A stretch of 64,000 nt of DNA. Origin: Leucoraja ocellata. Lineage: Eukaryota. The position numbers and the translations under genes were made by a program. Below are positions 29,250 through 53,250 of the stretch, in pieces; position 1 is the stretch's first letter; every line of letters begins with the position of its first letter. The notes beneath the pieces were generated by a model, which did not search any database, was not told the origin of the DNA, and saw only the letters and a list, made by a program, of their open reading frames with translations. The DNA lies in contig JAWMAR010000203.1 of NCBI GenBank assembly GCA_036785375.1, positions 3,534,001-3,598,000 on the forward strand, read 5' to 3'.

Positions 29250-29474
29250 NNNNNNNNNNNNNNNNNNNNNNNNNNNNNNNNNNNNNNNNNNNNNNNNNNN
29301 NNNNNNNNNNNNNNNNNNNNNNNNNNNNNNNNNNNNNNNNNNNNNNNNNNNNNNNNNNNNNNNNNNNNNNNNNNNNNNNNNNNNNNNNNNNNNNNNNNNN
29401 NNNNNNNNNNNNNNNNNNNNNNNNNNNNNNNNNNNNNNNNNNNNNNNNNNNNNNNNNNNNNNNNNNNNNNNNNN
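29250..29474. other. Assembly gap (225 N)
   Basis: Run of N. Confidence 1.
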
Positions 29475-31704: not shown

Positions 31705-31959
31705 AAAGAAACGAGACTTACTGCATGTCCGTGTAAGTGCCGTAGAAGAGATGCGTGTCGGGCCGAATGAATGAAGGCACAAAGTGCTGGAGTAACTCAG
31801 CGCTCAGGCAGCAAGTCTGGAGAATGTGGAGAGGTGATGTTTCGGGTTGGTTCCTATTCATGTTCTCTGCAGATGCTGCCTGATCCGCTGAGTTACTCCA
31901 GCACTTTGTGCCTCTTTTCTTGTAAACCAGCATCTTCAGTTCCTCGTTTCCACAAATGT

Positions 31960-32102
31960 ACGAAGAGTTGTTTCACTGAACTACCGTCCAATCTGCGGTC
32001 GATCTGACGCACAGCAGCGCAGAAAAACTCGCAGCGGTTGTGAATTCTGCAGAATGACCAGCGGCTCCGTGTGATCCGTGTCTCGGCACTTCCTTCACCA
32101 AA
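31960..32102 (+). promoter_or_regulatory. Putative proximal promoter of the VJ-C1 gene
   Basis: Short non-repeat, CpG-containing stretch before the ATG with CCAAT (31988), RUNX-type TGCGGT (31994), CRE/AP1-like TGACGCA (32005) and ETS-type CACTTCCT (32087). No clear TATA box. Confidence 0.45.
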
Positions 32103-32151
32103 ATGTCATCGTTTACACAATTCATCTCCACACTCTGCCTCTTTCTCCCAG
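32103..32151 (+). CDS. Exon 1, signal peptide MSSFTQFISTLCLFLP(G)
   Basis: ATG in caaaATG context, hydrophobic core, consensus donor CAG|gtaagt, phase 1 (split leader typical of IgSF genes). Confidence 0.85.
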
Positions 32152-35100
32152 GTAAGTCATTCATGTTCACCCTTGCCAACCTGCTCACGTTGTCTTCCTA
32201 TAACTTGTTTCTTTCTATGGCTTTTGCACTAAAGGTTGTTTTTTTGCCGTATTTTAGAAACTTCTTGTGTAATTTATGTTCAATTTGTTTTTGAATATGT
32301 GTTTGTTTCAGTGTAGGTGCATGTGATGCTGTTGCAAGCAAGATTTTAATTTAGACACAAAAGCAGAAATTGAACATGTAGTTTAAATAAGAATAAAGGG
32401 GAGACCATTTAAGACTGATGTGAGAAACAGCTTTTTCACCCAGAGAGTTGTGAATTTGTGGAATGGTTCCGAACCGAAACGTCACCCGTCATTTTTCTCC
32501 AGAGATGCTGCCTGACCCGCTGAGTTACTCCTGTACCTTGTGACACAAGGAACAGTAGATGCTGGAAATGCAGTTAATGTAAGTTTACATGAGGACATTA
32601 ACGCATAAATGTAAGAGACACAAGAAGTGCAGATGCTGGAATCTTGAACAAAACACAGTACTGGAGTAACTCAGCGGGTCAGGCAGCATCTCTGGAGAAC
32701 ATGGACAGGTCACGTTTCGCGTCGCCACCTTTCTTCGCATATGTTCTCCAGAGATGCTACTAGCGTCTCTAGCACTTTGTGTCTGTCTTCGATATAGATC
32801 AGCATCTGCAGTTCCTTCCAACACAAGTGGTTACAGGTGAGAGAGGGGGGGGGGGGGGGGGGGGTTAATTGGGCCTGGACCTCACTGTCCTTGTGCCCAT
32901 GATAGTAAACTCGAGTTACTCGGAAGGCGTCGTTAACTATGTTCACTTTCCGTGCCAGGGTCCGCTGTCGGTGTGAGGGTGAACCAGTCTCCTGCTGCTC
33001 TGACACTTCTCCGAGGGCAGACAGCTACGTTCACCTGCTCCCTGCTACCTGGAGAGGGGGAGGTAGTTTCAATGAGGCAATACTGGTTTCGGACGAAAGA
33101 CAACCCGGAGCTCTGGGACAACAAGACCGAGAGTTTTCTGAAGACAGGCGACCGACTGTTCGTGTCTGTGGGCTCGCTGGTCATTCGGGAGGTGACTGTG
33201 CACGATGCAGATACTTACCATTGTGTGGTACTGAATGAAGATATCTGGAAAAAGTTTACAGGAAACGGAACCACATTACATATCCAAGGTAATTAATATA
33301 ATAATAAACAGGAACAGGCCCTTCAGCCCGCAATGTTCGTGCGGCCCATGAGGCCAAGTTAAACAAACATGTGTCTATCCAAAAGTCTCTTAAACTCTAC
33401 GATCGAATCTGCCTCCACAGCCACCCCGAGATCTGATGCGATGGAGTTGGTGAATCACACGAACCCCAAGTTCCCTAAACCGAAACGCCGCCTGTCCATT
33501 CTCTCCATAGATGCGGCCTTAACCGCTGAGTTCCTCCAGCATTTTGTGTTTTGCTTAAGACTGCAGCGCCTGCAGTTCCATGTCTCTACTTCCATTTCAT
33601 TCCTGCATTTCATCTCTCTCTATTAATGCTCATTTTCTGGCACAAACCAGCCCAGTCTGACAAAAGGTCCCGAACTTAAACGTCATATATCCATGATTTC
33701 CAGAGATGCTGCCTGGCCCGCTGAGTTACTCCAGCGCTTTGAGCCTTTCTTTGGTAAAAATAAAACTCGCATCTACAGTTCCTCCTGTCTCCCTAATGAT
33801 ACAAAATAGATAATGAAAACAACATCAACCTCGGTCGTAGTGTTTATATCCCCCAACAGTTCTAGTGCTGGCATTTAATTCTCCTGATTTCCTTACAAGG
33901 AGGGAGTGTGGAAACAAAAGCATCTTTGTTTCTCTCAGTTTTCTCTAGATTCCCTCTTGACATGACCGGCTGAAGTCGTCAAGTTGGGAAAAGGGGAAGT
34001 ACAACGGGATCTGGGGGTCCTTGTTCATCAGTCTATGAAAGTAAGCATGCGGGTACAGCAGGCAATGAAGAAATCGAATGGCATGTTGGCCTTTATAACA
34101 CGAGGAATCGAATATAGGAGCAAAAGGGTATTTCTGCAGTTGTACAGAGTCCTAGTGAGACCACACATGGAGTATTGTGTGCAGTTTTGGTCCCCTAATT
34201 TGAGGAAGGACATTCTTGCTATTGAGGGAGTGCATCGTAGGTTTACAAGGTTAATTCCCGGGATGGCGGGACTGTCATATGCTGAGAGAATGGAGCAGCT
34301 GGGCTTGTACACTCTGGAGTTTAGAAGGATGAGAGGGTATCTTATTGAAACATATAAGATTATTAAGGGCTTGGGCACGCTAAAGGCAGGAAACATGTTC
34401 CCGATGTTGTGGGAGTCCAGAACCAGGGGCCACAGTTTAAGAATAAGGAGTAAGCCATTTAGAACGGAGACGCGGAAACACTTTTTTCTCACAGAGTGTG
34501 GTGAGTCTGTGGAATTCTCTGCCTCAGAGGGCGGTGGAGGCAGGTTCTCTGGAAGCTTTCAAGAGAGAGCTATGTAAAGCTCTTAAAAATAACGGAGTCA
34601 GGGGATATGGGGAGAAGGCAGGAACGGGGTACTGATTGGGGATGATCAGCCATGATCACAATGAATGGCAGTGCTGGCTCGAAGGGCCAAATGGCCTACT
34701 CCTGCATCTGTTGTCTATTGTCTATTGATTCTTGTCTTTGTCAAGTTCGGTTTAACATTTGCTTCCGGGCTCCAGGGGAGTATAATAATGCCCCTGAAAC
34801 AATTCCCGGCTGCGATAACCAAATGTGCGGCAGATGCATCATGTATATGTGTGAAAATGAACACAACTAAATATAAGCGATAGAATCAAGGAGGGCAGCA
34901 GTGAGAGAGGGCAGACTCAAAGTGATGGAGTAACAGCGGGTCAGGCAGCATCTCTGGACATCATGGATAGGTGACGTTTAGGGTCAGGAACCTTCGTCAG
35001 CCTGGGTTGGTTTGCGCCTCAACGTGCACATTAATAGAGAGAGATAAAATGCAGGAAGGGAAATAAATAGAAGTGGAGACGGGGAACTGCAGGCGCTGGA

Positions 35101-38100
35101 GTCTTAAGCAAAACACAAAGTAACGGGGAACTCGGCGGATAAGGCAGCATTCGTGGAGGTTTGGTGTTGGGGAACTTGGGACGTGTGTGAGGTCCCCAGC
35201 CCACTGTATCAGCGGACAGTGGGAATGGTCGCACACATCCCTAACGCTTCATTGAAGGGAGGCAGCTACAATGCAAACGTGTGGCCGCTCTCCCATCGCC
35301 CACGGGCTGGCGAGAGGGAGCCCGACCCGACCAGACTCTGCTAAATAATTCTGGCAACGTGAATCCATCTTCTGGCCAATCTGGGCCCGGACAGTACAGG
35401 ATGTAAAAGAAAAGAAAGAAAATGCTGGAGCTACTCATCGGGTCGGTCCGTGTGTGTGTGGGGGAGAATTTACCGATTCACATTGAAGGCTTCCAGTCGA
35501 AACCCTGATCCTGAGACACAAGGAACCGGAGGGGCTGGTTAAAACAAAGACGCAAAGTGCTGGAGGAACTCATCGGGTCAGGCAGCATCTCTGGAGAACA
35601 TGGACCGTCATTCTCTTCCCACGAATCAGGCTTGTACGGCTGAATATTTATATGGTACACAAAAAAATGCTGGAGAAACTCAGCGGGTGCAGACAGGGTT
35701 TCGGCGCGAAACGTCGCCTATTTCCTTCGCTCCATAGATGCTGCTGCACCCGCTGAGTTTCTCCAGCTTTTTTTTTGTGTACCTTCGATCTTCCAGCATC
35801 TGCAGTTCCTTCTTGAATATTTATATGTTCTGTTTTAGATGTCCATCATCGGCTTGGATTTAGTTTACCGTCTACATATTCACTTCCATTTCATGCATCA
35901 AAATACACAAAGTGCTGGAGGAACTCGGTGGGTCCGGCAGCATCTGAATGGACAGGCGACGATTCAGACCGAAGAAGGGTCCCGACCCGAAACACCGCCT
36001 GTCCATTCCCCCCGCAGATGTACCTGGCTCGATGAGTTCCTCCAGCACTTTGTGTTGGACAATGGACAATAGGTGCAGGAGTGGGCCATTTGGCCCTTCG
36101 AGCTAGCACCGCCATTCACTGTGATCATGGCTGATCATCCACAATTAGTATCCCGTTCCTGCCTTCTCCCCATATCCATGGACTCCGCTATCTTTAAGAG
36201 CTCTATAACTCTTGAACGCATCCAGAGAATTGGCCTCCACTGCCGAGGCAGAGAATTCCACAGATCCGCAACTCTCTAGTTGAAATGTTTTTCCTCATCT
36301 CCATTCTAAATGGCTTTCTTAAAAAAAAAATTCCAGCATCTCCAGTTCCTTGTGTCTCCAATTCCATTTCATTCGCTTCCTGTATTTTTCTTTCTTATTG
36401 TGCATTTTGAGACACAGACTGAAGAGATGTAGTCTGTAGATGTAACCCGACCCGAAACATCACATATCATCCATGAAGAGTTACTCCAGCACGTTGTGTC
36501 TCGTCAGCTATCCATGTTCTCCAGAGATGCCGACTGACCCTCTGAGTTACTCCAGTACTTGTGCCTTTCTTTGGTATAAACCAGCGTTTGCAGCTCCTCT
36601 TTATTCCGCTAATAATCCATTGAATAACTTGGTTGCTCCTTAAGCAGGTGCACGGCGTGCCGTGTTATCATAGTTGCTCCATGCATGACTGAGAGCGACA
36701 GGAAGATTCACAGCGTGTTATTTTCCTACTTTACGCAGCGAAGCCTGACATCTCCCTGACCCTGGATCCCGGGATAGAAGGCGCAGAGACGCGGAGCCTG
36801 ACTTGTGTGGCCTCCGGATTCTTCCCGAGGGAGCTGAACATGTCCTGGGCTGTCGTGGGCCAGTTGTCCTATGAAACAGAAGCGGGGCCGCTGAGGGAGA
36901 ATGAGGATGGAAGCTTCAACGTGAGCTCCCGGCTGCGGCTCACCGGCCCTCGGCTAGAGGCGGGCATGGTCGTCACCTGCCTGGTTCAGCACCTCACGGG
37001 GAAGGGCTCGGTGAGCGAACGTTTCCCTCCCATCCCGAGTAAGTGGCTTGAATGAACGTGGCAGCCAGCGTCCTCCAGTTACTGAAGATACACAGAGTGC
37101 TGGAGTAACTCAGCGGCTCAGTTACTGCCGAGTTACTCCAACATTTTGTGTCTATCTGCGCTGTAAACTAGCATCTGCAGTTCCTTCCTACACATGTCCA
37201 AGGTTGCAAGGTTTAATAGTACATGTGTACACATTTGTTAAACGTAGCCACAATGAACTGCAGATTCTTGATTACAAAAAATACACAAAGTGTTGAAGTA
37301 ACTCAGCAGCGTCTAGTAGCATCTCTGGAGAACGTTGAACGTAATTCATAAACCTGATCAAAAGTTTATGAGATCACTCAATGTGTACAATATCAACTGC
37401 AAATATGGATTTAGACTTTCAGACTTTAGAGATACGCGGGAAAAGGCATTTCGGCCGATCAGCGATCACCTCATACACTGGCTAGACAAACACACGCTGG
37501 AGGAACTCAGCAGGTGAGGCAGCATCTATGTAGAGAAGGATATGCGACGTTTCGGGTCGAGACCTTTCTTCTTAAACACATCATACATTAACACTATCCT
37601 GCGCATTGGGGACAATTTACAATTTTACCGAAGCCAATTAACATACAAACTCGTACGTCTTTGGAGTGTGGGAGGAACCCGGAGAACCCGGAAAAAAATC
37701 CACGCAGGTCACGGGAAGAACGTACAGACTCCGCACATCCAACACCCGTAGTCAGGATTGAACCCGCGTCTACTGCGCTGTAAGGCAGCAACTCAAGTAC
37801 AGTTCATCTGTGCATCGATATATATATATATACATATTTGAGTTGCTGCCTTATATATTATATAATTATTATATGTATATATACATCGATGATATCAGCT
37901 CAAGATATGTATATATATATGTGTGTATATGTGTATATATATATCTATATATATATATACACACACACATTTATATATATATCTTTCTTCATTATTATTT
38001 GAACCATTTACCGTTACAATACGGCGTAAGTGCTTTATCATATAAATATATTATATACATCTTGACCAGATAAAGCACTTACGCCGTATTTAAACTGTAA

Positions 38101-41100: not shown

Positions 41101-44100
41101 ACAACAGAATTACGGATTACATTCAAATAAATCTTTTAGATATTTACAACTTAAAGATTATGTTAAATCACATACACGAGAATACAGAACCAGAGAGCCA
41201 GAGATTCTAGATGAATGTTTGAATAAACACCCTAACACAGTCAAATTAATATCTCACATTTATAATACTTTTATAGACAGTGAGAATCTGTCGACGGAAT
41301 TATACAGACCAGCATGGGAAAAGGAATTAGCTCAACCTATACCGAAAGATATTTGGGACGAAAGCCTACAACATATACACCAATGTTCGTTAAATGCCAT
41401 ACATTCTTTAATACAATTTAAAGCACTACATAGACTGCATTATTCTAAAACAAATTTAAATAGAATGTTTCCTAATATCTCTCCTATCTGTGATAAATGT
41501 CAATCCCACGTGGCTAATTCAACCCATGCTTTTGTAATCTGTAGTAAAATTAAAAATTACTGGATGGATATTTTTAAAATAATCTCTGTAGTTGTCAATA
41601 CCCAAATCGATCCCGGTCCTAAATTAATAATATTGGGCATATCAGAACAATACCTAAACCTCAGAATAAACCAAAGAGATTTCCTTGATTACAGTATAAT
41701 AATTGGGAAAAAATTGATATTAAAATTTTGGAAAAACCCAACAACCCCCACAATCAAGATGTGGATTATGGAGATGTCAGAGACCTTACATTTGGAAAAA
41801 ATTAGATTTGTCTTAATTGACAAACCAGAATTATTCACTAGAATATGGTCTCCATTTATAGATTATTTGAAGGGGTAGATGCGGAGTGCTAGTGCGGAGG
41901 CCGGACTGAAGCGTGAACCCAGGACTAGATGAATAGTTATGTTCTCTGGCCCCAAGTTGTATTATTAATAGTTTATCCTATTTTTCTAATTTCCTTCTTT
42001 CTTTCTTTATTTTCCCATCTATAAATATAAATAAATAATTAGAGGCAATGTTAACATGTAACCGATAAAGGAGGATCCCAGCTACTTTGGTAACTGGCTC
42101 CCTGGAAACCTGGATATTTAATATGTAACCGTTAAACAAAGTCTGTACTGGTTTGGATTATGATATGCAGATGCCTCTAATAAAAATGTATTTAAAAAAA
42201 AAAGGAAATTGGAGGAACAACATCTCATATTTCGCTTGGGCAGCTTACAACCCAGGGGTATGAATATTGATTTCTCTAACTCCAAGTAACCCTTGAAGTT
42301 AGAGAAACCCTCTCTCTCTCCATCCCTCCCCATCCAAGTCACAACAGCTTTTTGTTCTCACCTAGCTACAGCTAACAATGACCTGTTTCCTTTATCATCA
42401 ATACTGTTTTGCATATCTTTCATTCAGTTGTTCTATATCTCTCGACATCATTGTCGATATCTTTTGTTTCCCTTCCCCTTGACTTTCAGTCTGAAGAAGT
42501 GTCTCGACCCAAAACATCACCCATTCCTTCTCTCCACAGATGCTCCCAGTCCCACTGAGTTACTGCAGCATTTTGTGTCTATCTTCGATTTGAACCAGCA
42601 TCTGCAGTTCCTTCCTATGAAATTCTGCTCATCTCTCTATCATCTATTTTTTCCCCTGTTCTCACGATCGGTCCTTGACCTGTTTCTTTAACTTTGTTTC
42701 TCTTTCCACATTTGCTGCCTGGTCTGCTGCATAGTTCCAGCATTTTCTTTCTTTTCTTTAACTTTTTTTTAAAAGCTTCTCATTGTAAATTGGTTACAAT
42801 GTAGTGCTTTATTATTATATGGCAGAATTACAAGTCACAGTTTATGCTCTGTGATTTGGGAGATCTTGGTTTCATAGTAAATGATTTACTGAAGCCAGTA
42901 GGCAGATATAGCAAATCAATGTGAAAGCTGTATAGTGGAAATGTCAAGGACTAGAGGACATAGCTTCAAGGTGAGAGAGGCAAAGTTTAAAGGAGATGTA
43001 CGGGACAAGTTGTTTTACACAGAGGGTGGTGAGTGCCTGGAACATGTTGCTAGTAGTGGTGGTGGAGGCTGATATGATAGTGGCATTTAAGAGGTGTTTA
43101 GAAAGGCATACGGATATGCAGGGAATGGAGGGATATGATTCACGTGCAGGCAGAGAAGATTGGTTTAACTTGGCTCCATGTTCGTCACAGACATTGCAGG
43201 CTGAAGGGCCTGTACTATGTTCTAAACTCTATGAGGTTGGCAGATTCTGTACACAACACATTCCAAGACAGACCATTACATAAAGGATTCACAGTTGATT
43301 TTGCATAATGATTTCTTCTTGTTGTTTGGTTTATAAGGGGCAAAGTTTAACGAAGATGTGCAGGGGGTGAGTTTTTGTACACAGGGTGGTGGGTTCCTGG
43401 AATGCACTGCCAGGGGTGGTAGTGGAGGCAGATATGATAGCGGTGTTTAAGAGGCTTTTAGGAAGCAGTTATGCAGCTGATTTTGCAAAGAACCCTAGTG
43501 GTTTGTGAAATGTTTCACTTCTCATAAACAGATCGGTAATTAACAATACTTATCGAGTCCACACCCAAGGTTAGAAGTTGTTCAGCCACAGACATACATT
43601 GATGTCTGTCTTGCGCTTGTTGTGCTTCCTGTGCGTGATGGTGGGAGATTGGTGGAAACAGGGCCGTGACGTGAACGCTCTTTCCTTGACCCCATTTACA
43701 ACACGTTATCTTGCGGTCATTTACAGTACAAGGAACCAATCTTTACCCCAGTAACAGTAAATTTAGTGAATAGTAAGAATGTTAATCTATGAATAGAATA
43801 ATGTAGGTTTTCTCCTATGAAAGGCCTGACTTATTTCTTTAAGGATAGATATTTGTAGAACTAGAATATTAAGCCAAATAACCAAACGGACGCAACGCCG
43901 AAAAGCCAAATAACCGAACATGATGTCGCCGGGGGGCAGGACTTGTCAGTGATTGGTCCAGACCCCCGTGTCCATTACATCACTGGCCGGTGGAGACGGG
44001 AGGGTGGGGGTCATTTTCCCACACCGGGGCTGGAGGGTCACTGGGCATTGTGAACCCGAGCACCAAGGTGTAAGGGGGCGAAGGAGCGCATCCCTCAGGG

Positions 44101-47100
44101 CAGCCCCCACCCTCCCCCCCAGGGTCGGCAGCACACACATACATGGGGCCGGGTGGAGCAGAGTTGGGGACAGTCTGGTCCCTCCGCCCACCCAGATTCA
44201 CTGACCGCAATGCACCACCACCAGACCCCGACACCCACACCGTGGTGATTCACCCTCCCCGAACCCTGGACCCGACCCACACACGGGGTAATTCACACCA
44301 CCGACACCCACACCGGGTGATTCACCCCCACCCCCACTCCCGGCCATGGGGACAGACGGCCTGGGGCGCTGGCAGTCAAAGTAAATCGCTTTTAAAACAT
44401 GGTGGGGGGGCCACAAATTCCGTGGCGGGCCAATGACAAGTGTGCATGACAATGAACAATTTTATCTCCTCCCACACCTCCCCTATTGACAACAATAAGC
44501 ACGTTTTAATTATTTATACACAGTAATACCGCCTGGTTGCCTGCGTAACGCACACACACCGGGTTGACTGCAATCATTGAAACAGGGCAGACCACGTGAA
44601 AGTTGCAATCTTCCAACCCATGCGTAACGCACAAAACACTAGATAATCTTATTTTTTCAGTTTATTTGCATTTCATGTGTTTTTTTGAACTTTGCGCATT
44701 TAACAGTGTCATTTTCACAGCGGTGTCGAGTGCATCGTACTTTTTCCCCCCGCAGATGATACATTACTCTCACAACACATAACTTACCTCTATTACCCCT
44801 GTACATAAAAACAAAATGACAATGCCCCTTCAAGGTCTACTAATCCACCCATAGCTTCAGTTGCAGGTACAGCTGAAGGGATTTGGCGCTCGGAACAATG
44901 ACTGCATTAGAAGATCATCTGAGCATCTTGAAATCAATCTCATGAGCACGAGTGAAAGATAGCCGAGCGATGCGGTATCGATCTGCCCACATCACACACA
45001 GTGGAAAAGAATGAAATGGAAATTGCAAATTATTCACCCTCATGAGATTGATTTCAAGATGCTCAGATGAACTTCTAATGCGCTCATTTATGTAGAGGGG
45101 TAATAGAGGTGAGGTATGTGATTCGAGAGTAATGTATCATCTGCGGGGGGGGGAAGAAAAGTACGATGTACTCAACACCGCTGTGAAAATGGCTGTTAAA
45201 TGCGCAAAGTTCATAAACACAAATGAACTGCAAATAAACTGAAAATAATCTGGTGTTTTGTGCGTGGGAGCTTGTTGTGTGCATTACGCAGGCAACCAGA
45301 TGGTATTACTGTGTTTAAACAATAAATAAAATGTGCTTCTTGTTGTCAAGGGAAAGGGGGAGGGGGGTAGTGGGAGGAGATAAAATTGGTCGGTGTGGGT
45401 GGGGTGGTGGGGGGTGAATCACCCTGGTCTGGGGGTCGAGGTCTGGTGGCGGGGCATCGTGGTCAGTGACTCTGGGTGGGCAGAGGGACCAGACTGTCCC
45501 CAACTCTGCTGCAGCTGACGGGCCGGGGATGTTGCCAAGTTTTTCTCCCCGTGTGTCCGCGGTCCCGTTTCACCCGGGCCCGTGTGTGCGTGCGCTGCCG
45601 ACCCACAGCCTGTCACAATGTGGCCGCACGGGGCAGACGAGACGGTGGGCGGCCGTGGCCGGACAGCACTGACCCGGGGGGGGGGGGGGGGGGGAGTTGG
45701 GTCTGTCTCGAGGGATGCGCTCCTTCGGCTGCTTACACTTTGGTGCTCGTGTTCCAAACGCCCAGTCACCCCCTTGCTCCGGGCGATCTTATGTGAGGAA
45801 AATGACCCCCACTCTCCCGTCTCCCCCAGCCAGTGATGTGATGGACGCGGGGGTCTGGACCAATCGCTGACAAGTCCCGCCCATTATTTTTCACTGTTGA
45901 GTCCGTTCAGTGAGTTGGCTTTTCAGCAATGCGCCCTTTCGGTTATTTGGTTTTTAGTGTCCCGCCGTTTTGGTTATTCGGCTTTTCGGCGTTGCGTCCG
46001 TTCGATTAGTTGGCTTTTCGGCGTTGCGTCCATTTGGTTATTTGGCTTTTCGGCATCGTTTCCGTTGGGTGGGAAAGTGTGATAACATAGAATTGGTTTG
46101 AGCAGGTGAGCGATGGCCAGTGTGGACTCGGTGGGCAGAAGCACCAGGTTCCATTCTGTTTCTTTAAACAAAATGAAACTAAACTAAATACATGTTTAAT
46201 GTTGTATGTAACAGTGCATTTATATTAACGTAACATGCATTAGTCATGATTATATTTGCTATTCATTGGAGCATTGTTTTGATTCACATTTCAATTGTGA
46301 TTTTCAAGGATCCTCCGAGTATTATTTCATTCTACTGAGTCTGATCCTAATAGTACCAATATGCGTCTGGATTGTGTATAATTACCACAGTAAATTGAAG
46401 AAAGGAAAAGGTAATGTATACATTGTACATCTTATTTTGTAATTTAACTAACAACTGAGCATATAAAAGTGAATATTGTATTTAGTTCCCGGTGAGAGTA
46501 AAATAATTTAAACAAAATGAAGGTGACACAGTGTTGCAGTTTGTAGAGCTGTTGCCTCACAGCGGGTTCAATCCTGACTGGGCGCTGACCATGTGGAGTT
46601 TGCACGTTCTCCCTGTGACCTCATGGGTTTTTTCAGAATGCTCCGGTTTCCTCTCATGTTTGGGTTTATAGGTTAATTGGCCTCTGTAAATTGCCCCTAG
46701 TGTGTAGGGAGTGGATGAGAAAGTGGGATAACATAAAACTAGCGTGATCGATGGGCGGCATAGACTCGGAGGGCTGAATGGCCTGTTTCTGTCCTGTACC
46801 TCTGAAGTACACTAAATCTTCATGATATTTTTATAGAATCATCTGTCCATGACGCAACTGTTGATATTCAAAGCATGAGAAAACAAAAAAACTCAGTAAA
46901 TGAGGTGAGTAATTTAGTTTGATATTTACCCTTATGTTGCATGCACGATGTTCTAATGTACACTGAGGTATTGTCAGCTTATATGAACAAATTCATCAGC
47001 ACTATTGGATGTAATGGACTAAGAACACAAGCCATTCTGCGGCACGTTGGCACAGTGGTAGAGTTGCTGCCTTGCAGCACCAGAGACCCAGGTTTGATCC

Positions 47101-50100
47101 TGACTACTGTTGCTGTCGGTACGGAGTTTGTATGTTTTCCCTGTGACCTTGTGGATATTCACCGGGTTCTGGCTGCTCATTCTCCAAAGGCGTACAGGTT
47201 AATTGGCTTCTGTAAAAATGATCGCTTGTGTGTAGGATAGTGCTAGCGCAGGTGTTATTTGCTGGTCGGCGCAGACTCGGTGGGCCGGAGGACCTGTTTC
47301 TCTAATACATCAGCAGTTCCTTGTGTCAGCAAACCCGAATGGTCACTTTGTACTTTTCCGATTGAGAGAATTTTTCAATGCATTTAACTTGGTTGCCGTT
47401 TGCTTCCATCGGCTGGAACTAAACTGCTAACAAAGTGAGTTCCATATTCCAAAGCACACTTCCTCTTCAAGGAGGCCTTGTGATCAACTGCATACCAGTC
47501 ATTGGACATTGCTGTGTAATGAGTTTTGTTGTTAATAACCAGTTGAAGATATTGCTGTGAATTTGCGTTGGATTTCATTCTTTTCAACTAAATCGCCTAT
47601 GCGTAAAACGACCTCAAGTGCCTGGTTTACTCAATATAGTGAATGCAGGGTCTTTTCCACGATAGGGAGGTCTGGCTGCGTTATTCAAGCACTTTGTCTT
47701 TTTTTATAAGCCACCATCTGCAGTTCCTTGCGTATTTATTAAAGTGCGGTTCTGTTACTTTTTTATTCTTCTACTCTGTGAAGACTTTAAGCTTGGAGTA
47801 TAATTCCAGGGTCTCATTGTCCTCAATGTTATCTCTCACTTCTTCAAGTGTATATCCTAGCGTTGATGAAATGATATATCTTGACCAAGTCTGATTAGAC
47901 TTTAGAGATACAGCGTGGAAACAGGACATTTGGCCCACCGAGTCCGCACCGACCAGCAATCACCTCTTACACTAACGATATCCTACACACTGGGGACATT
48001 TTACACATTTACCAAAGCCAATTAACCTACAAACCTGTATGTCTTTGGAGTGTGGGAGGAAACTGGAGCATCTGGAGATCCCACGCGATCAAGGGGAGAA
48101 CATATAAACTTTGTACAGACAGCACGTGTAGTCAGTCGGGATTAAAACCAGGTCTCTGCCGCTGTGAGGCAGCAACTCTACCGCTGTGCCAATGTGCCCC
48201 CTAATCATGCAGAGTTTTGCACATGACATTAGTTGCACTCCTCAGACTGACTTTCACCTCTGTATCATTTTATACACACAAAACCTGATAGCGCGCGACA
48301 AACAAAACAGCTGTTAATCTTGTCCTTTTAGAGTTGGTCAGATACAGGTCACAATGGCAGATTATAGCAGGCACAGATATTCCCTACACACTGGGGGCAA
48401 TTTACAGAAGACCACAAACCCGCACGTCTTTGTGACATGGGGGGAAATTAGAGCATGGATGAATTAATTAACTCTGCCCGATATCTTTCCCTGGACTCCC
48501 CGTACTGAATGTGCAGCAGCTGAAAGTGATGGGTTTTCTCCTTAAACAGCTCAGTGAGTGGTTGCATGAGTTTTTGCAGTTGGAGGTCACTTCAGTAAAA
48601 TATGAATTGCCAGCGCAAAGTTCTCTGATTCTAGCAATATTCCACCGTCATACCACACTGTCCCCTGCCAACAACAATCCCATCAATACCAACCTGCCTG
48701 AGATCATTTGTTGCCGGCCCTGATTTGTCCCAGTCTTTGCTTACTTCCAGTTCCTCCCCGCTACTACCCCTCTCCCCTCCCCCAGTCTGAAGAAGGGTCC
48801 CGACCCAAAACGTCACCTATTCACCACACAGACATGTGGCTCATTGACTTTCTCCAGCCAGGGTGTGTTTTTGATGATTACACAGAAAAGCTGGAGAAAC
48901 TCAGCGGGTGCAGCAGCATCTATGGAGCGATGGAAATAGGCAACGTTTTGGGCCGAAACCCTTCTTCAGACTGATCGGGGGTGGGGGTGGGTGGGGACAA
49001 GAAAGGGAAAAGGAGGAGTAGCCAGAAGGTGTTTTTGATGTTATTGGTTGACTTTTGGAGGCAGCGCCTCCTGCAGATCCCTTCGATGTTGGGGTGGTCT
49101 GTTCCTGCGATGGACTAGGCAGTGCCCACCTCTCTTTGTAACCTGCTTCATTCCTGGGAGATGTTGACAATGATATCAGTGAAACAGATATTGCCCACAA
49201 GTGTCACATGCCCATCGATCACATGGACACACACATCCACACTTTAGCTTTTGCCTATTTGGTGTTTACTAATCAAATTCGTTACTGATCTTCACATGAC
49301 TTTTCAACATAAATCAGGAACAGAGTATTTATACCTCATTAGGTTCAGCGAAAAATAAAATGACCATAAGATCATCAGACATAGTAGCAGAATTAGGTCA
49401 TTCAGCCCATCGAGTCTGCTCCGATATTCACTCATGGCTGATCTAATTTTCCCTCTCAACCAATTATCCTGCATTCTCCCCGTAATCTTTGACACCCGTA
49501 CTAATCAAGAATCTATCATTCTCCCCATTAAAGATACCCAATGTCTTGGCCCCCACCACTGTCTGTGCTAATGAATTCCACAGATTCACCACCATCTGGC
49601 AAAATAAATCCTCTCATCTCCATTCTATTGTTATCCTCAATTTTCTAAAGTTCTAAAACTCCCCCTCTTCGCCAATTCTAAAATGAACAATAAAATGTTT
49701 ATAACAATAAGGTGGAATGTATGCAGAGAAGGTTTACAATGATGTTGCCAGGACCTGAGGGCCTGAGCTGTAGGGAGAGGTTGGGTGGGCTAAGACACTA
49801 TTCCTGGAGCACAGGAGCATAAGTGGCGATATTATAGATGTGTATAAAATGATGATGGGAATAGATGAGTCTTTTACCCAGAGAAGGGAATCTATATATT
49901 ACTAAAAGTCTGATCTGGACCGCTTTTGGCTCGCTGTGCTGTGATTTCTGAGAGACCGCCATCACCTACGGCCCTCATTTTTGGCCACCTCGCTCAGAGC
50001 CCCCGTCCGCCTTCTGGGACCGGAGGATTTTTCCCATCGATGAAATATCAGACAGATATTAATGTTTTTAAATAATTTGCCATTCTCTCTCCTGCCTCTG

Positions 50101-52420
50101 CTGGATGGAGGGTTGTTTGGGGGGGGGGGGGGGGGTGGGTTGAAGTCAAAAGGCACTGCCTGCAAATGGTTGCTTGTCTAAACTTGACAACTTCCTGTTT
50201 GCACTATATTGATTTTAGATAAAACGCGACCACTTACGGCTGTGATTTTGAAATGGTATGAAACTGCATTTGAATATGGTGTCGTTGCACCCTGCATGAA
50301 ATGGTATGAAACTACATTTGAAATTGGTGACCTTGCACCCTGCTTGAAGTGGTAGGAAACTGAACCTGTATTTGGTGGCCTTGCACCCTGCTTGATGGGC
50401 AAATTAATGGAAATGATACTTAGACATAATATATATAAGCATCTGGATAAACAGGGTCTGATTAGGAACAGTCAACATGGATTTGTGCCTGGAAGGTCAT
50501 GTTTGACTAATCTTCTTGAATTTTTTGAAGAGGTTACTAGGGAAATTGACGAGGGTAAAGCAGTGGATGTTGTCTATATGGACTTTAGTAAGGCCTTTGA
50601 CAAGGTTCCTCATGCAAGGTTGGTTAAGAAGGTTAAACTGTTGGGTATAAATGCAGGAATAGCAAGATGGATTCAACAGTGTCTGAATGGGAGAAGCCAG
50701 AGGGTAATGGTGGATGGCTGTTTGTCGGGTTGGAGGCAGGTGACTAGTGGGGTGCCTCAGGGATCTGTGTTGGGTCCTTTGTTGTTTGTCATGTACATCA
50801 ATGATCTGGATGAAGGGGTGGTAAATTGGATTAGTAAGTATGCAGATGATACCAAGATAGGGGGTGTTGTGGATAATGAAGAGGATTTCCAAAGTCTACA
50901 GAGTGATTTAGGCCATTTGGAAAAATGGGCTGAAAGATGGCAGATGGAGTTTAATGCGGATAAATGTGAGCTGCTACACCTTGGCAGGACAAATCAAAAT
51001 AGGACGTACATGGTAAATGGTAGGGAATTGAAGAATACAGTTGAACAGAGGGATCTGGGAATAACCGTGCATAGTTCCTTGAAGGTGGAATCTCATATAG
51101 ATAGGGTGGTAAAGAAAGCTTTTGGTATGCTAGCCTTTATAAATCAGAGCATTGAATATAGAAGCTGGGATGTAATGTTAAAAATGCACAAGGCATTGGT
51201 GAGACCAAATCTGGAGTATGGTGCCCAATTATAGGAAGGATGTCAACAAAATAGAGAGAGTACAGAGGAGATTTACTAGAATGTTGCCTGGGTTTCAACA
51301 ACTAAGTTACAGAGGTAGGTTGAATAAGTTAGGTCTTTATTCTCTGGAGCGCAGAAGGTTAAGGGGGGACTTGATAGAGGTCTTTAAAATGATGAGAGGG
51401 ATAGACAGAGTTGATGTGGACAAGCTTTTCCCTTTGAGAATAGGGAAGATTCAAACAAGAGGACATGACTTCAGAATTAAGGGACAGAAGTTTAAGGGTA
51501 ACATGAGGGGGAACTTCTTTACTCAGAGAGTGGTAGTGGTGTGGAATGAGCTTCCAGTGGAAGTGGTGGCGGCAGGTTCATTGGTATCATTTAAAAATAA
51601 ATTGGATAGGCATATGGATGAGAAGAGAATGGAGGGTTATGGTATGAGTGCAGGCAGGTGGGACTAAGGGAAAAAAAGTTGTTTGGCACGGACTTGTAGG
51701 GCCGAGATGGCCTGTTTCCCTGCTGTAATTGTTATATGGTTATATGGTTTGAAGTGGTATGAAACTGCACTTGAATTGTGTTGCCTTGCACCCTGCTCGA
51801 AGAGGTATTAAACTGCACTTGAATTTGGTGGCCTTGCACTCTGCTTGAAATGGAATTTCAAGGAATAGCCACTTAGTCTAGTTGAGAAATAGAAGGCATA
51901 TGTTTAATGTGAGAGGGAAAAACCTGAGGGGCAACTTTATCAATCAGAGGGTGGTGGGTATATGGAACGAGCCACCTGTGGAGGTAGTTGAGGCAGGGAA
52001 TATAACACCATTTAAAATATATTTGGACAGGTGCGTGGACGGGAGCGTGGACGGGAGCGTGGACGGGTGCATGGACGGGTGCATGGACAGGAAAGGTTTA
52101 CAGGGACGAGAGCCAACCACGGGCAAATGGGACAAGCTTAGATGGGGCATCTTAGTTGGCGTAGACCAGTTGGGCCGATGGGTCTGTTTCCATGCTGTAT
52201 AACTCTATGATATGAATATAACACAACTATTTACAAGTGAGCCTTATTGTTACTTGTTATTTTTCTGTTACAGGATAATGTTTCAATAAACAATGAAAAT
52301 CTGCATTATGCGCCTGTTTATTTCAACAAGCGACAGCGAAGACAGGAATTGAGGTGGACCGAGCAATCCCAAGAAACAGAATATGCCATCTTAAAGGTCA
52401 AAGATAACAATAATTTATGA
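32103..52420 (+). CDS. Six-exon non-rearranging VJ-C1 Ig-superfamily inhibitory receptor (NKp30/SIRP/PRARP-VJC1-like), 331 aa; join(32103..32151,32959..33288,36739..37038,46309..46410,46837..46904,52274..52420)
   Basis: All five introns are GT-AG with matching phases (1,1,1,1,0). The spliced CDS is 996 nt, open from ATG to TGA. Domain order is leader, V, C1, TM, cytoplasmic with ITIM and ITSM. Confidence 0.88.
32959..33288 (+). CDS. Exon 2, germline-joined VJ-type Ig V domain
   Basis: Acceptor ttcactttccgtgccag. Translation VRVNQSP..FTC..YWFR..SLVIREV..DADTYHC..FTGNGTTLHIQ has the B-strand Cys, C-strand Trp, DxxxYxC and a J-like GxG motif. Donor AAG|gtaatt. Confidence 0.95.
33984..34725 (+). 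mobile_element. CR1 3' fragment in intron 2
   Basis: QRDLGVLV..MEYCVQFWSP..SRTRGHSL with a (tctattg)n tail. Confidence 0.9.
36739..37038 (+). CDS. Exon 3, C1-set Ig constant domain
   Basis: Acceptor ttttcctactttacgcag. Translation KPDISL..LTCVASGFFPRELNMSW..NEDGSFNVSSRL..VTCLVQH has the C1 signatures CxxxGFxP, W, NxDGSF and CxVxH. Donor gtaagt, phase 1. Confidence 0.95.
37815..38060. repeat. (TA)n-rich microsatellite / AT-rich tract
   Basis: Interrupted (TA)n and (CA)n runs. Confidence 0.85.
39570..42620 (+). mobile_element. Penelope-like element (GIY-YIG endonuclease end plus terminal repeat), split by an L1
   Basis: FTCISSNLTYCIRCSRCGLLYIGETKCRLGHHFAEHL. It resumes after the L1 as LEEQHLIFRLGSLQPRGMNIDF. 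Confidence 0.85.
39951..42205 (+). mobile_element. L1-clade LINE, 5'-truncated
   Basis: RQGCPLSPLLF, LYADD, SGYRINWNKSE, CDKC..H..C, polyA tail. 12-bp TSD aaattggaggaa at 39939-39950 and 42206-42217. Confidence 0.93.
43871..46070. mobile_element. About 2.2-kb imperfect foldback (palindromic) DNA element in intron 3
   Basis: Arms match as reverse complements from the terminal (aagccaaataaccgaa)n arrays, through tggtccagaccccc, to the centre near 44900-45085. Confidence 0.85.
46309..46410 (+). CDS. Exon 4, transmembrane segment
   Basis: Acceptor gattttcaag. Translation SSEYYFILLSLILIVPICVWIVYNYHSKLKKGK is a 20-aa hydrophobic stretch followed by a basic stop-transfer. Donor AAG|gtaatg, phase 1-1. 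Confidence 0.85.
46525..48200. mobile_element. Three HE1-like SINEs (46525-46810 plus; 47040-47300 plus; 47895-48200 minus)
   Basis: tRNA-like head, ttctccctgtgacc core and CR1-like tail. Confidence 0.75.
46837..46904 (+). CDS. Exon 5, cytoplasmic linker
   Basis: Acceptor atatttttatag, translation (E)SSVHDATVDIQSMRKQKNSVNE, donor GAG|gtgagt. It supplies the phase 1 to 0 switch needed to reach exon 6. Confidence 0.8.
48784..48815 (+). ncRNA. Minimal hammerhead ribozyme-like motif in a Penelope-derived repeat (representative of many copies)
   Basis: gt-CTGAAGA-a-gggtc-cc-gaccc-(g>a)AAAcgtc-ac. Other copies keep GAAA, so the family consensus has an intact core. Confidence 0.65.
49891..51881 (+). 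mobile_element. Non-autonomous Helitron with an internal minisatellite of about 48 bp
   Basis: 5' A|TCTATATATTACTAAAA and 3' CTAG|T with no TSD. The flanks rejoin as a CR1 fragment (gggaa|ttgagaaatagaagg). Confidence 0.8.
50396..51748 (+). mobile_element. Young CR1 LINE (RT plus 3' UTR) nested in the Helitron
   Basis: 280-aa ORF with QHGF, DFSKAFD, GVPQGS and YADD, (ttatatgg)n tail, ttga duplicated at both ends. Confidence 0.95.
52274..52420 (+). CDS. Exon 6, cytoplasmic tail with ITIM and ITSM
   Basis: Strong acceptor ttttttctgttacag. Translation DNVSINNENLHYAPVYFNKRQRRQELRWTEQSQETEYAILKVKDNNNL*. AATAAA at 52440-52445. Confidence 0.88.
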   Translation, partial: DNVSINNENLHYAPVYFNKRQRRQELRWTEQSQETEYAILKVKDNNNL

Positions 52421-53250
52421 AGAGCCCATAACCCAGAGTAATAAATTGTCCCTCTTCAACGAGACCACAAACTGATAATTATCATAAAACCACACACTCT
52501 TCTCGCAAACAATATACGTAGAATATAAGAAACAGAAACTAAAGGCTGTAGCACAGCTTGTGAAATTTAATTCTCTATTCAATTACTTTCCTTGAGCTCA
52601 AAACCAATTGATCTGACTCGACCTTGATCGCCTTCTCAGAGTTCCAAATGTTTAGCATTATTATTGCCGTGTGTAGTGAGGTACAGTGAAAAGCTTTGTT
52701 TTGCATGCTATCCAATCAAATCAGATATTACTATACATACACCAGTAAATACAATTAAGTCAAGTACAAGAGGTAGAGCAAAGGGGAAGATACAGAGTGC
52801 AGAATATAGTTCTCAGCATTGTAGCACATCAGTCCAATGTCCGCAATGGGGTAGAGGTGAATCGGACAGTACCCTAGCTTATGAAAGGACCGTTCGGAAG
52901 CCTGATAACGGAGGGGAAGAAGCTGTTCCTGAATCTGTTGGTGTGCATTTTCAAGCTTCTGTACCTTCTGCCTGGGGAGCAGGGAGAAAAAGGAATGCCG
53001 GGGTGGGGCAAGTCTTTGATTATGCTGGCTGCCAAACCGATGAGCCGCACATCTCTACTTTCAGAAGAAGGGTTCCGACCCAAAACATCACCTTTTTGTT
53101 GTTCCAGAGACCCGCTGAGTTACTCCAGCACTTTGTATCTATCTAGAGCAGGGTCACACTGAAGATGGGTCTTGCCCTAAAACATCACCCGTCCATGTCC
53201 TCCAGAGATGTCGCTTTGATAATATCAGGCATTTTGTGTGCCTGACAAAA

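What the first reader, a model, noticed from the sequence alone, without database searches (positions are those of the whole stretch)
32103..52420. Hidden, intact, non-rearranging VJ-C1 receptor with an inhibitory tail
Seen: six phase-compatible exons splice to a 331-aa ORF (leader, VJ, C1, TM, ITIM/ITSM) with no lesions, inside heavily decayed repeats. Known: C1-set domains are largely restricted to Ig, TCR, MHC, beta2m, tapasin, SIRP and a few B7-type molecules. A single-exon VJ plus C1 is the architecture proposed for the pre-RAG antigen-receptor ancestor (NKp30, PRARP/VJC1-type genes). Inference: this is a cartilaginous-fish inhibitory receptor built on an antigen-receptor-like ectodomain, possibly an undescribed family member. 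Orthology cannot be settled from this window.
Basis: partly seen in the sequence, partly recalled or inferred. Interest (0 to 1): 0.93.

Follow-up and report, generated by a model that had tools for sequence, protein, structure and literature searches.

The report
SIRP-like VJ-C1 inhibitory receptor gene
This is an intact gene for an immune "brake" receptor whose outer part looks like one chain of an antibody or T-cell receptor; the same gene is computer-predicted but unstudied in many sharks and rays, so it is real and of evolutionary interest but not unique to this genome.

Summary
The six exons are real: 49+330+300+102+68+147 nt, AG/GT at every splice site, 331 codons plus TGA. Pfam calls V-set and C1-set, and the C1 exon meets three published C1-set sequence criteria.

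A 612-nt contig from a small run of a sister organism joins the V exon to the C1 exon at the predicted sites. The other four junctions rest only on collinear homology.

The gene is not unique. Nineteen predicted proteins from 11 named sharks and rays share the architecture under inconsistent automatic names: SIRP-beta-1-like, SHPS-1-like, Ig-kappa-like, TCR-beta-like. Three are activating-type partners with Arg in the membrane span.

Sharks carry four tail tyrosine motifs, arranged as in SIRPα. Rays lost two. Here a small deletion ends the protein just after the second motif, so "no lesions" is slightly too strong.

Deep orthology (SIRP, PRARP or an own lineage) stays open. Trees do not nest the family in amniote SIRPs, and PDB scores tie SIRPα, UrIg2 and Ig light chain.

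Unchecked first-stage notes list more VJ-C1 receptor clusters elsewhere in this genome, one about 62 kb upstream. No joined-model search was run.

The parts
32103..32151 (+). Exon 1: start codon and most of the signal peptide (split leader). It ends in phase 1 with donor GTAAGT.
   Evidence: sequence read; in-frame stop 16 codons upstream with no earlier ATG; 8 of 16 residues identical to the Mobula leaders. Not covered by the spliced contig.
32959..33288 (+). Exon 2: end of the leader plus a complete V domain with a germline-joined J-like strand.
   Evidence: V-set 7.8e-9. E 1.9e-35 and 68% identity to Pristis XP_051870357; covered by the spliced contig of run X4 from 32986.
33255..33287 (+). 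J-like motif (F-x-G-x-G-T-x-L-x-I) inside the V exon.
   Evidence: no RSS heptamer or nonamer consensus in 32000-38000 except one heptamer at 36117, deep in intron 2.
36739..37038 (+). Exon 3: one C1-set constant domain.
   Evidence: C1-set 2.7e-13. One search read against the criteria: FFP motif, 13 residues between Cys and Trp, L-V-Q-H after the second Cys; joined to exon 2 in X4 record 25.
46309..46410 (+). Exon 4: stalk, uncharged membrane span and basic stop-transfer residues. It is 102 nt and phase 1 to phase 1, so skipping it would keep the frame.
   Evidence: 19 of 31 residues identical to Pristis. TM-less isoforms are predicted in Heptranchias and Heterodontus.
46837..46904 (+). Exon 5: 68-nt cytoplasmic exon.
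   Evidence: best of 11 candidates of this length, donor GAG|GTGAGT; 13 of 21 identical to Pristis and 14 of 22 to Heterodontus, in the right order.
52274..52420 (+). Exon 6: cytoplasmic tail and the TGA stop.
   Evidence: 28 to 30 of 46-47 residues identical to the inhibitory orthologues.
52301..52318 (+). ITIM (L-H-Y-A-P-V).
   Evidence: Conserved as L-[HQ]-Y-A-x-V in all 8 chondrichthyan tails shown.
52376..52393 (+). ITSM-like motif (T-E-Y-A-I-L), 25 residues after the ITIM tyrosine.
   Evidence: Conserved as x-E-Y-A-x-L in 7 of the 8 chondrichthyan tails; Pristis has T-V-Y-A-A-L.
52421..52518 (+). Out-of-frame remnants of the ancestral distal tail after the stop, and an AATAAA at 52440.
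   Evidence: Y-E-E-P in frame +1, and a 24-residue match to the Hypanus tail in frame +2; tblastn E 8.6e-4 at 52447-52518.

Best explanation
The locus is an intact six-exon gene for a type I membrane receptor. It has a split leader, one exon with V and a J-like strand already joined, one C1-set domain, an uncharged membrane span, and a cytoplasmic tail with an ITIM and an ITSM-like motif.

It is the representative, in this (probably batoid) genome, of a family found in sharks and rays. That family has inhibitory members like this one and activating-type members with near-identical ectodomains, a short tail and an arginine in the membrane span.

Shown here: the exon structure, the domain types, collinear orthologues, and V-to-C1 splicing in a sister organism.

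Inferred: the V domain binds a cell-surface or pathogen ligand through its CDR-like loops. Src-family kinases then phosphorylate the two tail tyrosines, and tandem-SH2 phosphatases (SHP-1/SHP-2 type) dock and damp activation, as in SIRPα or PD-1. The activating partners would signal through a DAP12/FcRγ-type adaptor.

The nearest named relatives are the SIRPs. Whether the family is a true SIRP lineage, the cartilaginous-fish PRARP, or a lineage of its own is not settled.
For: Exons, splice sites and phases.

Domains. The C1 criteria quoted from PMC2785349 are met in the sequence.

Splicing: X4 record 25 (612 nt) lies on 32986-33234 and then on 36737-37036. X4 has depth 0 in unique intron bins (32000-32199, 35200-35399), whereas the DNA runs X1-X3 cover them.

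Family size:
- 74 proteins at E<=1e-3, of which ranks 1, 2, 3 and 5 are family members (E 1.9e-35 to 7.1e-17).
- 19 proteins from 11 named species.
- all six exons are collinear with them, and 44 of 51 family-invariant columns are kept.

Placement within the family: the window's C1 sits in a starred batoid clade (100/99, 10 rows).

Activating-type partners: (P0076, P0086, P0087).

SIRP as nearest named kin:
- a bird SHPS-1 (96 bits) is the only natural non-family hit of 18.
- Atlas nearest clusters are SIRPα, at 0.97/0.96 for the catshark orthologue and 0.95 for a frog relative.
- four tail tyrosine motifs spaced as in bird and turtle SIRPα.
Against: Only 1 of 5 junctions has read support. That support comes from another organism, in a run whose kind is not on record.

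No listed holder of the V exon is recorded as RNA.

The tail is cut short relative to all orthologues. Seven of 51 family-invariant positions are changed. Six of the 8 exonic differences listed between the assembly and runs X1-X4 change the amino acid. This could mean relaxed constraint.

Ligand, cell type and signalling are all inferred from motifs.

The SIRP affinity is weak:
- The V exon alone finds no SIRP among its best 60 PDB matches.
- The family profile scores IgA1/λ 119.3, UrIg2 119.0 and SIRPα 115.8 bits.
- The family C1 model scores human CH3 (46.9 bits) as high as SIRP domains (29-48 bits).
- The trees keep the family outside the amniote SIRP V, d2 and d3 clades.
Confidence: 0.8

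Rival explanations
1. It is a true orthologue or co-orthologue of tetrapod SIRPα that kept only one of the two C1 domains. This would move the origin of the SIRP family, and perhaps of a CD47-type 'self' checkpoint, back to the base of jawed vertebrates.
For: -: a bird SHPS-1 is the only natural non-family hit of the family profile.
- the nearest Atlas clusters are SIRPα.
- SIRPα 2wng is the second-best PDB chain for the catshark orthologue (83.2 bits), aligned over V plus the first C1 in one stretch.
- the shark tails carry four tyrosine motifs with SIRPα-like spacing (28/19/19 against 25/22/26 residues).
- paired activating forms exist, as with SIRPβ.
- NCBI's pipeline names 10 of the 19 proteins SIRP-beta-1-like or SHPS-1-like.
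Against: -: neither the V nor the C1 nests within or beside the amniote SIRP clades. The family C1 groups with a frog V-V-C1 protein instead (92/91).
- SIRP V domains score only 13-31 bits against the family V model, below frog and teleost uncharacterised V domains (37-48 bits).
- a tie with UrIg2 and Ig chains.
- no cartilaginous-fish protein among the 120 listed hits of a bird SIRP, though this is a word-limited search.
- ITIM tails converge easily.
- A 2026 survey dates the SIRP family to Tetrapoda (PMC13262535, passages seen).
Confidence: 0.3
2. [quoted passage not shown] 2019). As I recall that paper, PRARPs are non-rearranging VJ genes with a C1 domain outside birds and an ITIM-bearing tail, reported from bony fish to birds.
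For: The architecture matches what I recall of that paper: a single-exon VJ, one C1, a membrane span and an ITIM.

PMC10751288 lists PRARP among VJ genes. PMC11599192 lists it among VJ-domain IgSF members with SIRP and NKp30.

A frog protein (P0038: V-V-C1, membrane span, L-H-Y-A-T-I and T-E-Y-A-A-V motifs) aligns with the catshark orthologue over 341 residues at 28% identity, and its C1 groups with the family (92/91). So the family has a tetrapod relative that is not a classical SIRP.
Against: No PRARP sequence could be obtained, and the paper is not held. Nothing was compared directly.

The frog protein is unnamed in its source. It too sits nearest the SIRPα clusters in the Atlas.
Confidence: 0.2
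3. The copy in this genome is decaying, i.e. an expressed or unexpressed pseudogene in the making, even though the family is functional elsewhere.
For: -: two frame changes in the distal tail region, with the stop right after the second motif.
- 7 of 51 invariant columns changed, including loss of the N-glycosylation site next to the first V cysteine.
- 6 of 8 listed exonic differences are non-synonymous.
- longer end branch than the median (0.52 and 0.38 against 0.22 and 0.12).
Against: - There is no stop or frameshift in 993 coding bases spread over 20 kb, and all ten splice dinucleotides are intact.
- Both cysteine pairs and the core tryptophans are kept.
- The lost tail part carries no tyrosine motif in other rays anyway.
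- The sister organism's spliced contig differs by a multiple of three (about 6 nt) in the J-proximal part and has depth 40.
- No other skate-like species is in the set, so a long branch is expected.
Confidence: 0.1
4. It is a short, membrane-bound member of the UrIg/UrIg2 family of non-rearranging shark antibody-like genes.
For:: UrIg2 (9dmx) is the top PDB chain for the C1 exon (E 1.1e-19, summed over three domains of 22.6, 17.8 and 29.5 bits).

the family profile gives 59.0 bits over UrIg2 V-C1 in one stretch.

UrIg2 has a membrane form (PMC12227049 section 7).
Against: - UrIg has three C domains and is secreted. UrIg2 has nine to eleven C domains in sharks, and its first C domain is lost in batoids. 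This family has one C domain, or two by recent duplication.
- UrIg2 is not among the best 60 PDB matches of the V exon.
- Per-domain C1 scores equal those of IgG CH3.
- No ITIM is mentioned for UrIg2 in that paper (0 occurrences).
Confidence: 0.05

Closest known systems
SIRPα / SIRPβ (signal-regulatory proteins, SHPS-1)
   Same: - N-terminal V domain with a J-like G-x-G-T strand, followed directly by C1-set domain(s).
- A paired inhibitory and activating arrangement with a basic residue in the activating membrane span.
- Tyrosine motifs of ITIM type in the tail, four in the shark orthologues with similar spacing.
- Nearest named clusters and the only natural remote hit.
   Different: - One C1 domain instead of two.
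- V and C1 are not nested in the amniote SIRP clades.
- The basic residue is Arg here; that SIRPβ uses Lys is my recollection.
- The window's tail keeps only two motifs.
- Ligand unknown, synteny untested.
PRARP (Fu et al. 2019, J Immunol 202:1992; paper not held, content recalled)
   Same: A non-rearranging single-exon VJ, a V-C1 layout, a membrane span and an ITIM-bearing tail. PRARP is discussed as a relic of the antigen-receptor precursor (mentions seen).
   Different: As I recall it, PRARP was reported from bony fish to birds and not from cartilaginous fish.
UrIg and UrIg2 (Flajnik et al. 2023, 2025; PMC12227049 sections 4 and 7 read)
   Same: An elasmobranch non-rearranging VJ exon with a split leader, followed by C1-type domains. 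C1 similarity is at the same level as to Ig.
   Different: UrIg is secreted, has three C domains and forms a disulfide-linked dimer made in liver. UrIg2 has many C domains. Neither is described with an ITIM tail or with paired activating forms. The V domains are not close.
NKp30 (NCR3)
   Same: A non-rearranging VJ domain receptor known in sharks; named as the other MHC-linked VJ gene in PMC12227049.
   Different: That NKp30 has a V domain only and signals through a charged membrane residue, with no C1 domain and no ITIM, is my recollection.
PD-1 tail (ITIM plus ITSM)
   Same: An ITIM followed 25 residues later by a T-E-Y-A motif.
   Different: PD-1 has a single V domain, no C1 and no J-like strand of this type. 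The +3 residue of the second motif here is Leu, not the Val/Ile of the textbook ITSM (recalled consensus).

Membership tests
IgSF C1-set domain | (F/Y)(F/Y/H)P at the start of the BC loop; exactly 13 residues between the strand-B Cys and the strand-C Trp; x-V-x-H after the strand-F Cys (criteria quoted from PMC2785349). | tested here: met
   Exon 3 reads C-[13 residues including F-F-P]-W and C-L-V-Q-H. Pfam C1-set 2.7e-13 against C2-set_2 5.8e-4.
Non-rearranging VJ gene | V and a J-like G-x-G-T-x-L strand encoded in one exon, with no recombination signal sequence. | tested here: met
   A single 330-nt exon ends in the J-like motif. No heptamer or nonamer consensus lies in or next to it.
ITIM-bearing inhibitory receptor | An uncharged membrane span and at least one (I/V/L/S)-x-Y-x-x-(L/V/I) motif in the tail (consensus recalled). 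| tested here: met
   L-H-Y-A-P-V at 52301-52318. T-E-Y-A-I-L at 52376-52393 is ITSM-like, with Leu at +3. The membrane span has no charged residue. Phosphatase recruitment was not tested.
SIRP family | V domain followed by two C1-set domains. | tested here: not met
   One C1 exon here and in 9 of the 11 species. The two C1 domains in Hypanus and Mobula birostris are recent duplicates of each other.
SIRP family | V and C1 domains group with SIRP domains in trees. | tested here: not met
   SIRP V (100/97), d2 (100/99) and d3 (88/81) form clades that exclude the family. Sampling is thin: amniote SIRPs only, with human Ig domains as the only outgroup.
SIRP family | Inhibitory member with four tail tyrosines, and an activating partner with a basic membrane residue. 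| tested here: inconclusive
   Four motifs in 4 of 4 shark tails and two in the window's tail. Activating-type partners occur in Pristis, Mobula hypostoma and Hemitrygon, but none in this window. Such features also arise by convergence.
SIRP family | Conserved gene neighbourhood, and CD47 as ligand. | not testable with these tools
I recognised no other gene in the window. Ligand binding needs an experiment.
PRARP | Sequence orthology to chicken PRARP1/2 and their fish, amphibian and reptile orthologues. | not testable with these tools
   The paper is not held and no PRARP sequence is available. The architecture (VJ, C1, membrane span, ITIM) agrees with what I recall.
UrIg / UrIg2 | VJ followed by three or more C1-type domains; secreted (UrIg) or with a long C-domain array (UrIg2). 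| tested here: not met
   One C1 exon between the V and TM exons, and no further C1-like stretch in the window. Definitions taken from PMC12227049.
Rearranging antigen receptor (Ig/TCR) | Separate V and J segments flanked by RSS. | tested here: not met

The most novel reading that the evidence does not exclude
The elasmobranch family, together with the frog V-V-C1 relative, is a third, membrane-bound lineage of non-rearranging VJ-C1 genes. It would be as old as jawed vertebrates and roughly equidistant from SIRP, UrIg/UrIg2 and Ig/TCR chains. It would preserve the signalling, paired (inhibitory/activating) form that a pre-RAG antigen-receptor ancestor may have had. Its map position in an MHC or antigen-receptor paralogon would then bear directly on where antigen receptors arose.
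Probability: 0.25. Interest if true: 0.75.

Novelty: new member of a known kind. Interest (0 to 1): 0.45.

Why it matters
C1-set domains are confined to antigen receptors, MHC molecules and a few associates. Single-exon VJ genes are sought as relics of the gene that the RAG transposon split (PMC12227049, PMC2785349).

This family is a VJ-C1 receptor conserved across sharks and rays, with inhibitory and activating partners, that no paper I could search describes. Automatic pipelines name it four different ways. It gives comparative immunologists another anchor beside UrIg, UrIg2, NKp30, SIRP and PRARP.

If it proves to be SIRP-lineage, it moves the SIRP origin from tetrapods (PMC13262535) to the base of jawed vertebrates. 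If it proves to be PRARP, it completes that family's range.

For this window alone the result is modest: a correct gene model of a family already predicted elsewhere.

Tried and rejected
I recognised no other gene in the window.

Atlas. The window's V exon could not be read by the Atlas. Stored homologues were used instead.

Reads. The single sequencing-run run used the V exon and returned no run recorded as RNA. The single read-laying run covered 31600-37599 only, so exons 4 to 6 have no read evidence.

PRARP. The term occurs with an immunological meaning in only 2 held papers. Fu et al. 2019, the UrIg 2023 paper and Ohta et al. 2019 are not held.

Searches for a description of this family found none:
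- 'SIRP/C1-set/cartilaginous fish/shark'.
- 'signal regulatory protein/elasmobranch/paired receptor/SIRP' (no listed paper holds 'elasmobranch').
- 'nonrearranging/C1 domain/shark/ITIM'.
- 'SIRP/chondrichthy'.
Subscription journals and supplementary files were not visible and may hold such a description.

UrIg2 membership was considered and rejected on domain number and V dissimilarity.

A paralogue or an alternative activating TM exon inside the window was sought and not found.

The trees cannot settle deep orthology. The only outgroup was the human Ig domains of an engineered antibody (P0091).

Rows left out of the trees:
- 7 of the 20 family proteins: the isoforms or partial models P0001, P0002, P0083, P0084, P0085, P0088 and P0089. 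In addition P0074, whose V domain is partial, is in the C1 tree only.
- 113 of the 120 listed SIRPs.

Alignment A1 used 10 of the 19 named family proteins.

The earlier-findings search by sequence was blank.

Full report
What is there.

Reading the + strand and scanning for open AG...GT intervals gives six exons: 32103-32151, 32959-33288, 36739-37038, 46309-46410, 46837-46904 and 52274-52420. Their lengths are 49, 330, 300, 102, 68 and 147 nt. All five acceptors are AG and all five donors are GT. Exons 2 to 5 start in phase 1 and exon 6 in phase 0. The total is 996 nt, i.e. 331 codons plus TGA.

All searches were exon by exon or used database proteins.

The fifth exon is the least obvious. Among 443 frame-compatible intervals between exons 4 and 6, 11 have the required 68 nt. 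The interval 46837-46904 has the best splice context (donor GAG|GTGAGT) and is the one that matches the orthologues.

Upstream of the ATG there is an in-frame stop 16 codons away and no earlier ATG. The introns hold reverse-transcriptase fragments. Intron 3 holds a roughly 2.2-kb palindrome.

Domains.

Pfam gives V-set for exon 2 (7.8e-9) and C1-set for exon 3 (2.7e-13, against 5.8e-4 for CD80-like C2-set). Nothing passes a cut-off for exons 4 and 6.

Exon 3 meets the three sequence hallmarks of C1-set domains given by Hatherley et al. 2009 (PMC2785349, passages seen):
- an F-F-P motif;
- exactly 13 residues between the first Cys and the Trp;
- L-V-Q-H after the second Cys.

Exon 2 ends in F-x-G-x-G-T-x-L-x-I. 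This is a J-like strand with one extra residue after the Phe. No RSS heptamer or nonamer consensus lies in or beside the exon.

Exon 4 encodes an uncharged hydrophobic span followed by basic residues. Exon 6 carries L-H-Y-A-P-V and, 25 residues later, T-E-Y-A-I-L. The second motif has the Thr of an ITSM but Leu at +3, so I call it ITSM-like (consensus recalled).

Expression.

It listed 6 runs, of which 4 hold part of it and none is recorded as RNA.

Laid on 31600-37599, runs X1-X3 of organism A behave as DNA. Their contigs cross exon-intron borders (for example 32873-33134 and 33105-33362) and cover unique intron bins.

Run X4 is from organism B and is 83 million letters in size. It has depth 0 in the unique intron bins 32000-32199 and 35200-35399. 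It holds one 612-nt contig (record 25, depth 40) that lies on 32986-33234 and continues on 36737-37036. Ten and 11 letters differ in the two pieces. About 58 letters lie between them, where the window has 52-54. That is the diverged J-proximal end of exon 2 with a length difference of about 6 nt, a multiple of three.

The two bases before exon 3 are AG, as are the last two of exon 2, so the joint falls at the predicted sites. I read this as a spliced transcript of a close relative. That X4 is RNA is my inference from this pattern.

Exon 1 and exons 4 to 6 have no read evidence.

Relatives.

The V exon searched against 1.84 billion representatives gave 74 proteins at E<=1e-3. Ranks 1, 2, 3 and 5 (E 1.9e-35 to 7.1e-17, 68-49% identity) are 290-436-residue proteins with the same layout.

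With cluster look-ups and two further searches the family comes to 19 predicted proteins from 11 named species.
- Rays: Pristis pectinata, Hypanus sabinus, Mobula birostris, Mobula hypostoma, Hemitrygon akajei and Narcine bancroftii.
- Sharks: Scyliorhinus canicula, Heptranchias perlo, Stegostoma tigrinum, Hemiscyllium ocellatum and Heterodontus francisci.
- In addition, one MetaClust protein of unnamed origin (P0074).

Their automatic names disagree: signal-regulatory protein beta-1-like, tyrosine-protein phosphatase non-receptor type substrate 1-like, immunoglobulin kappa light chain-like, T cell receptor beta chain-like, Ig heavy chain Mem5-like, and uncharacterized.

No protein flagged as encoded by this window appeared among the 16 and 18 hits. 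The locus may therefore lack a gene model in this genome, though that is not proof.

Each of the six exons aligns with the orthologues in the right order. Identity to Pristis is 73/107 for V, 58/95 for C1, 19/31 for TM, 13/21 for exon 5 and 28/47 for exon 6. The window keeps 44 of the 51 columns that are invariant in the family alignment.

In the C1 tree the window falls in a starred clade of ray sequences (100/99, 10 rows), so the genome is probably a batoid not among the 11 species. The window itself holds no second copy of any exon.

A paired family.

Three relatives (Pristis P0076, Mobula hypostoma P0086, Hemitrygon P0087) have the same V-C1 but a different membrane span containing an arginine, and a tail of a few residues. 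In Pristis the C1 is identical to that of the inhibitory gene. This is the pattern of paired activating and inhibitory receptors.

No such alternative exon lies in this window.

Two species have predicted isoforms without the TM exon (P0082, P0083). Here, too, exon 4 is 102 nt and symmetric in phase, so skipping it would stay in frame. That is an inference.

The tail.

The four shark proteins shown carry four tyrosine motifs: L-H-Y-A-x-V, T-E-Y-A-x-L, V-x-Y-S-x-V (R-D-Y-S-V-A in Hemiscyllium) and T-x-Y-[AV]-S-L. The spacing is 28, 19 and 19 residues. Bird and turtle SIRPα have four at 25, 22 and 26.

The rays have lost the third and fourth tyrosines. In the window the reading frame ends right after the second motif. 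Where the orthologues have two more codons, the window has a single base, which brings TGA into frame. The following Y-E-E-P and the C-P-S-S...N-Y-H-K-T-T stretch can still be read in the +1 and +2 frames (tblastn E 8.6e-4).

So the protein is about 16-37 residues shorter than its ray orthologues, but it has lost nothing that they still use as a tyrosine motif. An AATAAA lies 20 nt past the stop.

What family is it?

Evidence for SIRP as the nearest named kin:
- The family profile found, beyond the 16 family clusters, only a tinamou SHPS-1 (96 bits, E 9.2e-22) and an engineered antibody. These were 18 hits among the 8000 candidates scored.
- The Atlas puts the catshark orthologue nearest two SIRPα clusters (0.97 and 0.96) and does the same for a frog relative (0.95).
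- SIRPα 2wng is the second-best PDB chain for the catshark protein (83.2 bits, V plus first C1 in one stretch).
- The tail and the pairing resemble SIRPα and SIRPβ.

Evidence against a simple SIRP assignment:
- The V exon's best 60 PDB matches are antibody light chains, scFvs, shark VNARs, contactins and one DSCAM, with no SIRP.
- The C1 exon scores UrIg2, IgG/IgA constant domains and SIRPα/γ alike.
- The family profile gives IgA1/λ 119.3, UrIg2 119.0 and SIRPα 115.8 bits.
- A family C1 model scores human CH3 at 46.9 bits and SIRP d2/d3 at 29-48 bits. A family V model scores SIRP V at 13-31 bits, below uncharacterised frog and teleost V domains at 37-48 bits.
- In the trees, SIRP V (100/97), d2 (100/99) and d3 (88/81) are clades that exclude the family. 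The family C1 groups with the C1 of a frog V-V-C1-TM protein (P0038) at 92/91, on a long branch. That frog protein aligns with the catshark protein over 341 residues, including both tail motifs (28% identity).
- A bird SIRP query listed 120 of 166 hits, all from birds, a turtle or a lemur.
- A 2026 survey places the first appearance of the SIRP family at Tetrapoda (PMC13262535, passage seen).

The obvious other candidate is PRARP. The held literature names it only in passing. As I recall Fu et al. 2019, it has exactly this VJ-C1-TM-ITIM layout in non-avian species.

UrIg and UrIg2 (PMC12227049, sections 4 and 7 read) differ in domain number, in secretion, and in having no reported ITIM (0 occurrences).

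How it most likely works.

Shown: a type I membrane protein gene with an antigen-receptor-like V-C1 ectodomain, an uncharged span and two conserved tail tyrosine motifs. It is conserved across elasmobranchs, with activating-type partners in relatives.

Inferred:
- ligand recognition by the V domain's loops;
- tyrosine phosphorylation on engagement;
- docking of SHP-type tandem-SH2 phosphatases on the two motifs 25 residues apart;
- dampening of activating signals, with the Arg-bearing partners signalling through a DAP12/FcRγ-type adaptor.

Six of the 8 exonic differences listed between the assembly and the runs change the amino acid, and two of them restore the residue common in the family (172 further differences were not shown). 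This fits either diversifying selection, as in other paired receptors, or relaxed constraint. I cannot tell which.

Context from the scan.

Unchecked first-stage notes report several clusters of non-rearranging VJ-C1 paired receptors on other pieces of this genome. They also report one leader-VJ-C1-TM gene of 294 aa about 61.6 kb before this window's start. I could not read those stretches. If they hold, this gene belongs to a larger multigene family in this genome.

Verdict.

The gene is a new member of a known kind (VJ-C1 receptors with ITIM tails) and belongs to a family already predicted, but as far as I could search not described, in sharks and rays. Its wider interest depends on two things not testable here: its map position and its relation to SIRP and PRARP.

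Supplementary files were not consulted.

Noticed in passing
about 61.6 kb before the window's start (outside the window): A first-stage note (s1-884632) reports another leader-VJ-C1-TM-tail gene of 294 aa on the same piece. It could be a paralogue or the activating partner of this gene.
   Followed up: no
window 43871-46048: A large palindrome in intron 3. Ten inverted-repeat pairs (42-113 nt, 79-94% complementary) tile two arms of about 1.1 kb around a centre near 44990. It looks like a foldback element.
   Followed up: partly
window 33017-33253 and 36774-36813: Eight listed differences between the assembly and runs X1-X4 fall in the V and C1 exons, and 6 change the amino acid. F>S at 33160 and S>A at 36813 restore the residue usual in the family.
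   Followed up: partly
window 17253-19064: Two adjacent long ORFs on the + strand (408 and 184 aa) have no Pfam family above cut-off, only a sub-threshold NPP-6 helical match. They may be one interrupted gene of a mobile element.
   Followed up: partly
window 32846-32866: A run of about 21 G in intron 1, just upstream of the V exon.
   Followed up: no
window 25315-25514 and 29250-29474: Two runs of N (200 and 225 letters).
   Followed up: no
P0038 (Leptobrachium leishanense, UniRef A0A8C5P6H9): A frog protein with two V domains, one C1, a membrane span and the same L-H-Y-A / T-E-Y-A tail motifs. It is a possible tetrapod counterpart of the elasmobranch family.
   Followed up: partly
P0031 (Chiloscyllium plagiosum XP_043533794) and P0039 (Heterodontus francisci XP_067879862): Other shark proteins built of tandem VJ-like domains without a C1. 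They are named SIRP-beta-1-like and PTGFRN-like, and are distinct from this family in the V tree.
   Followed up: partly
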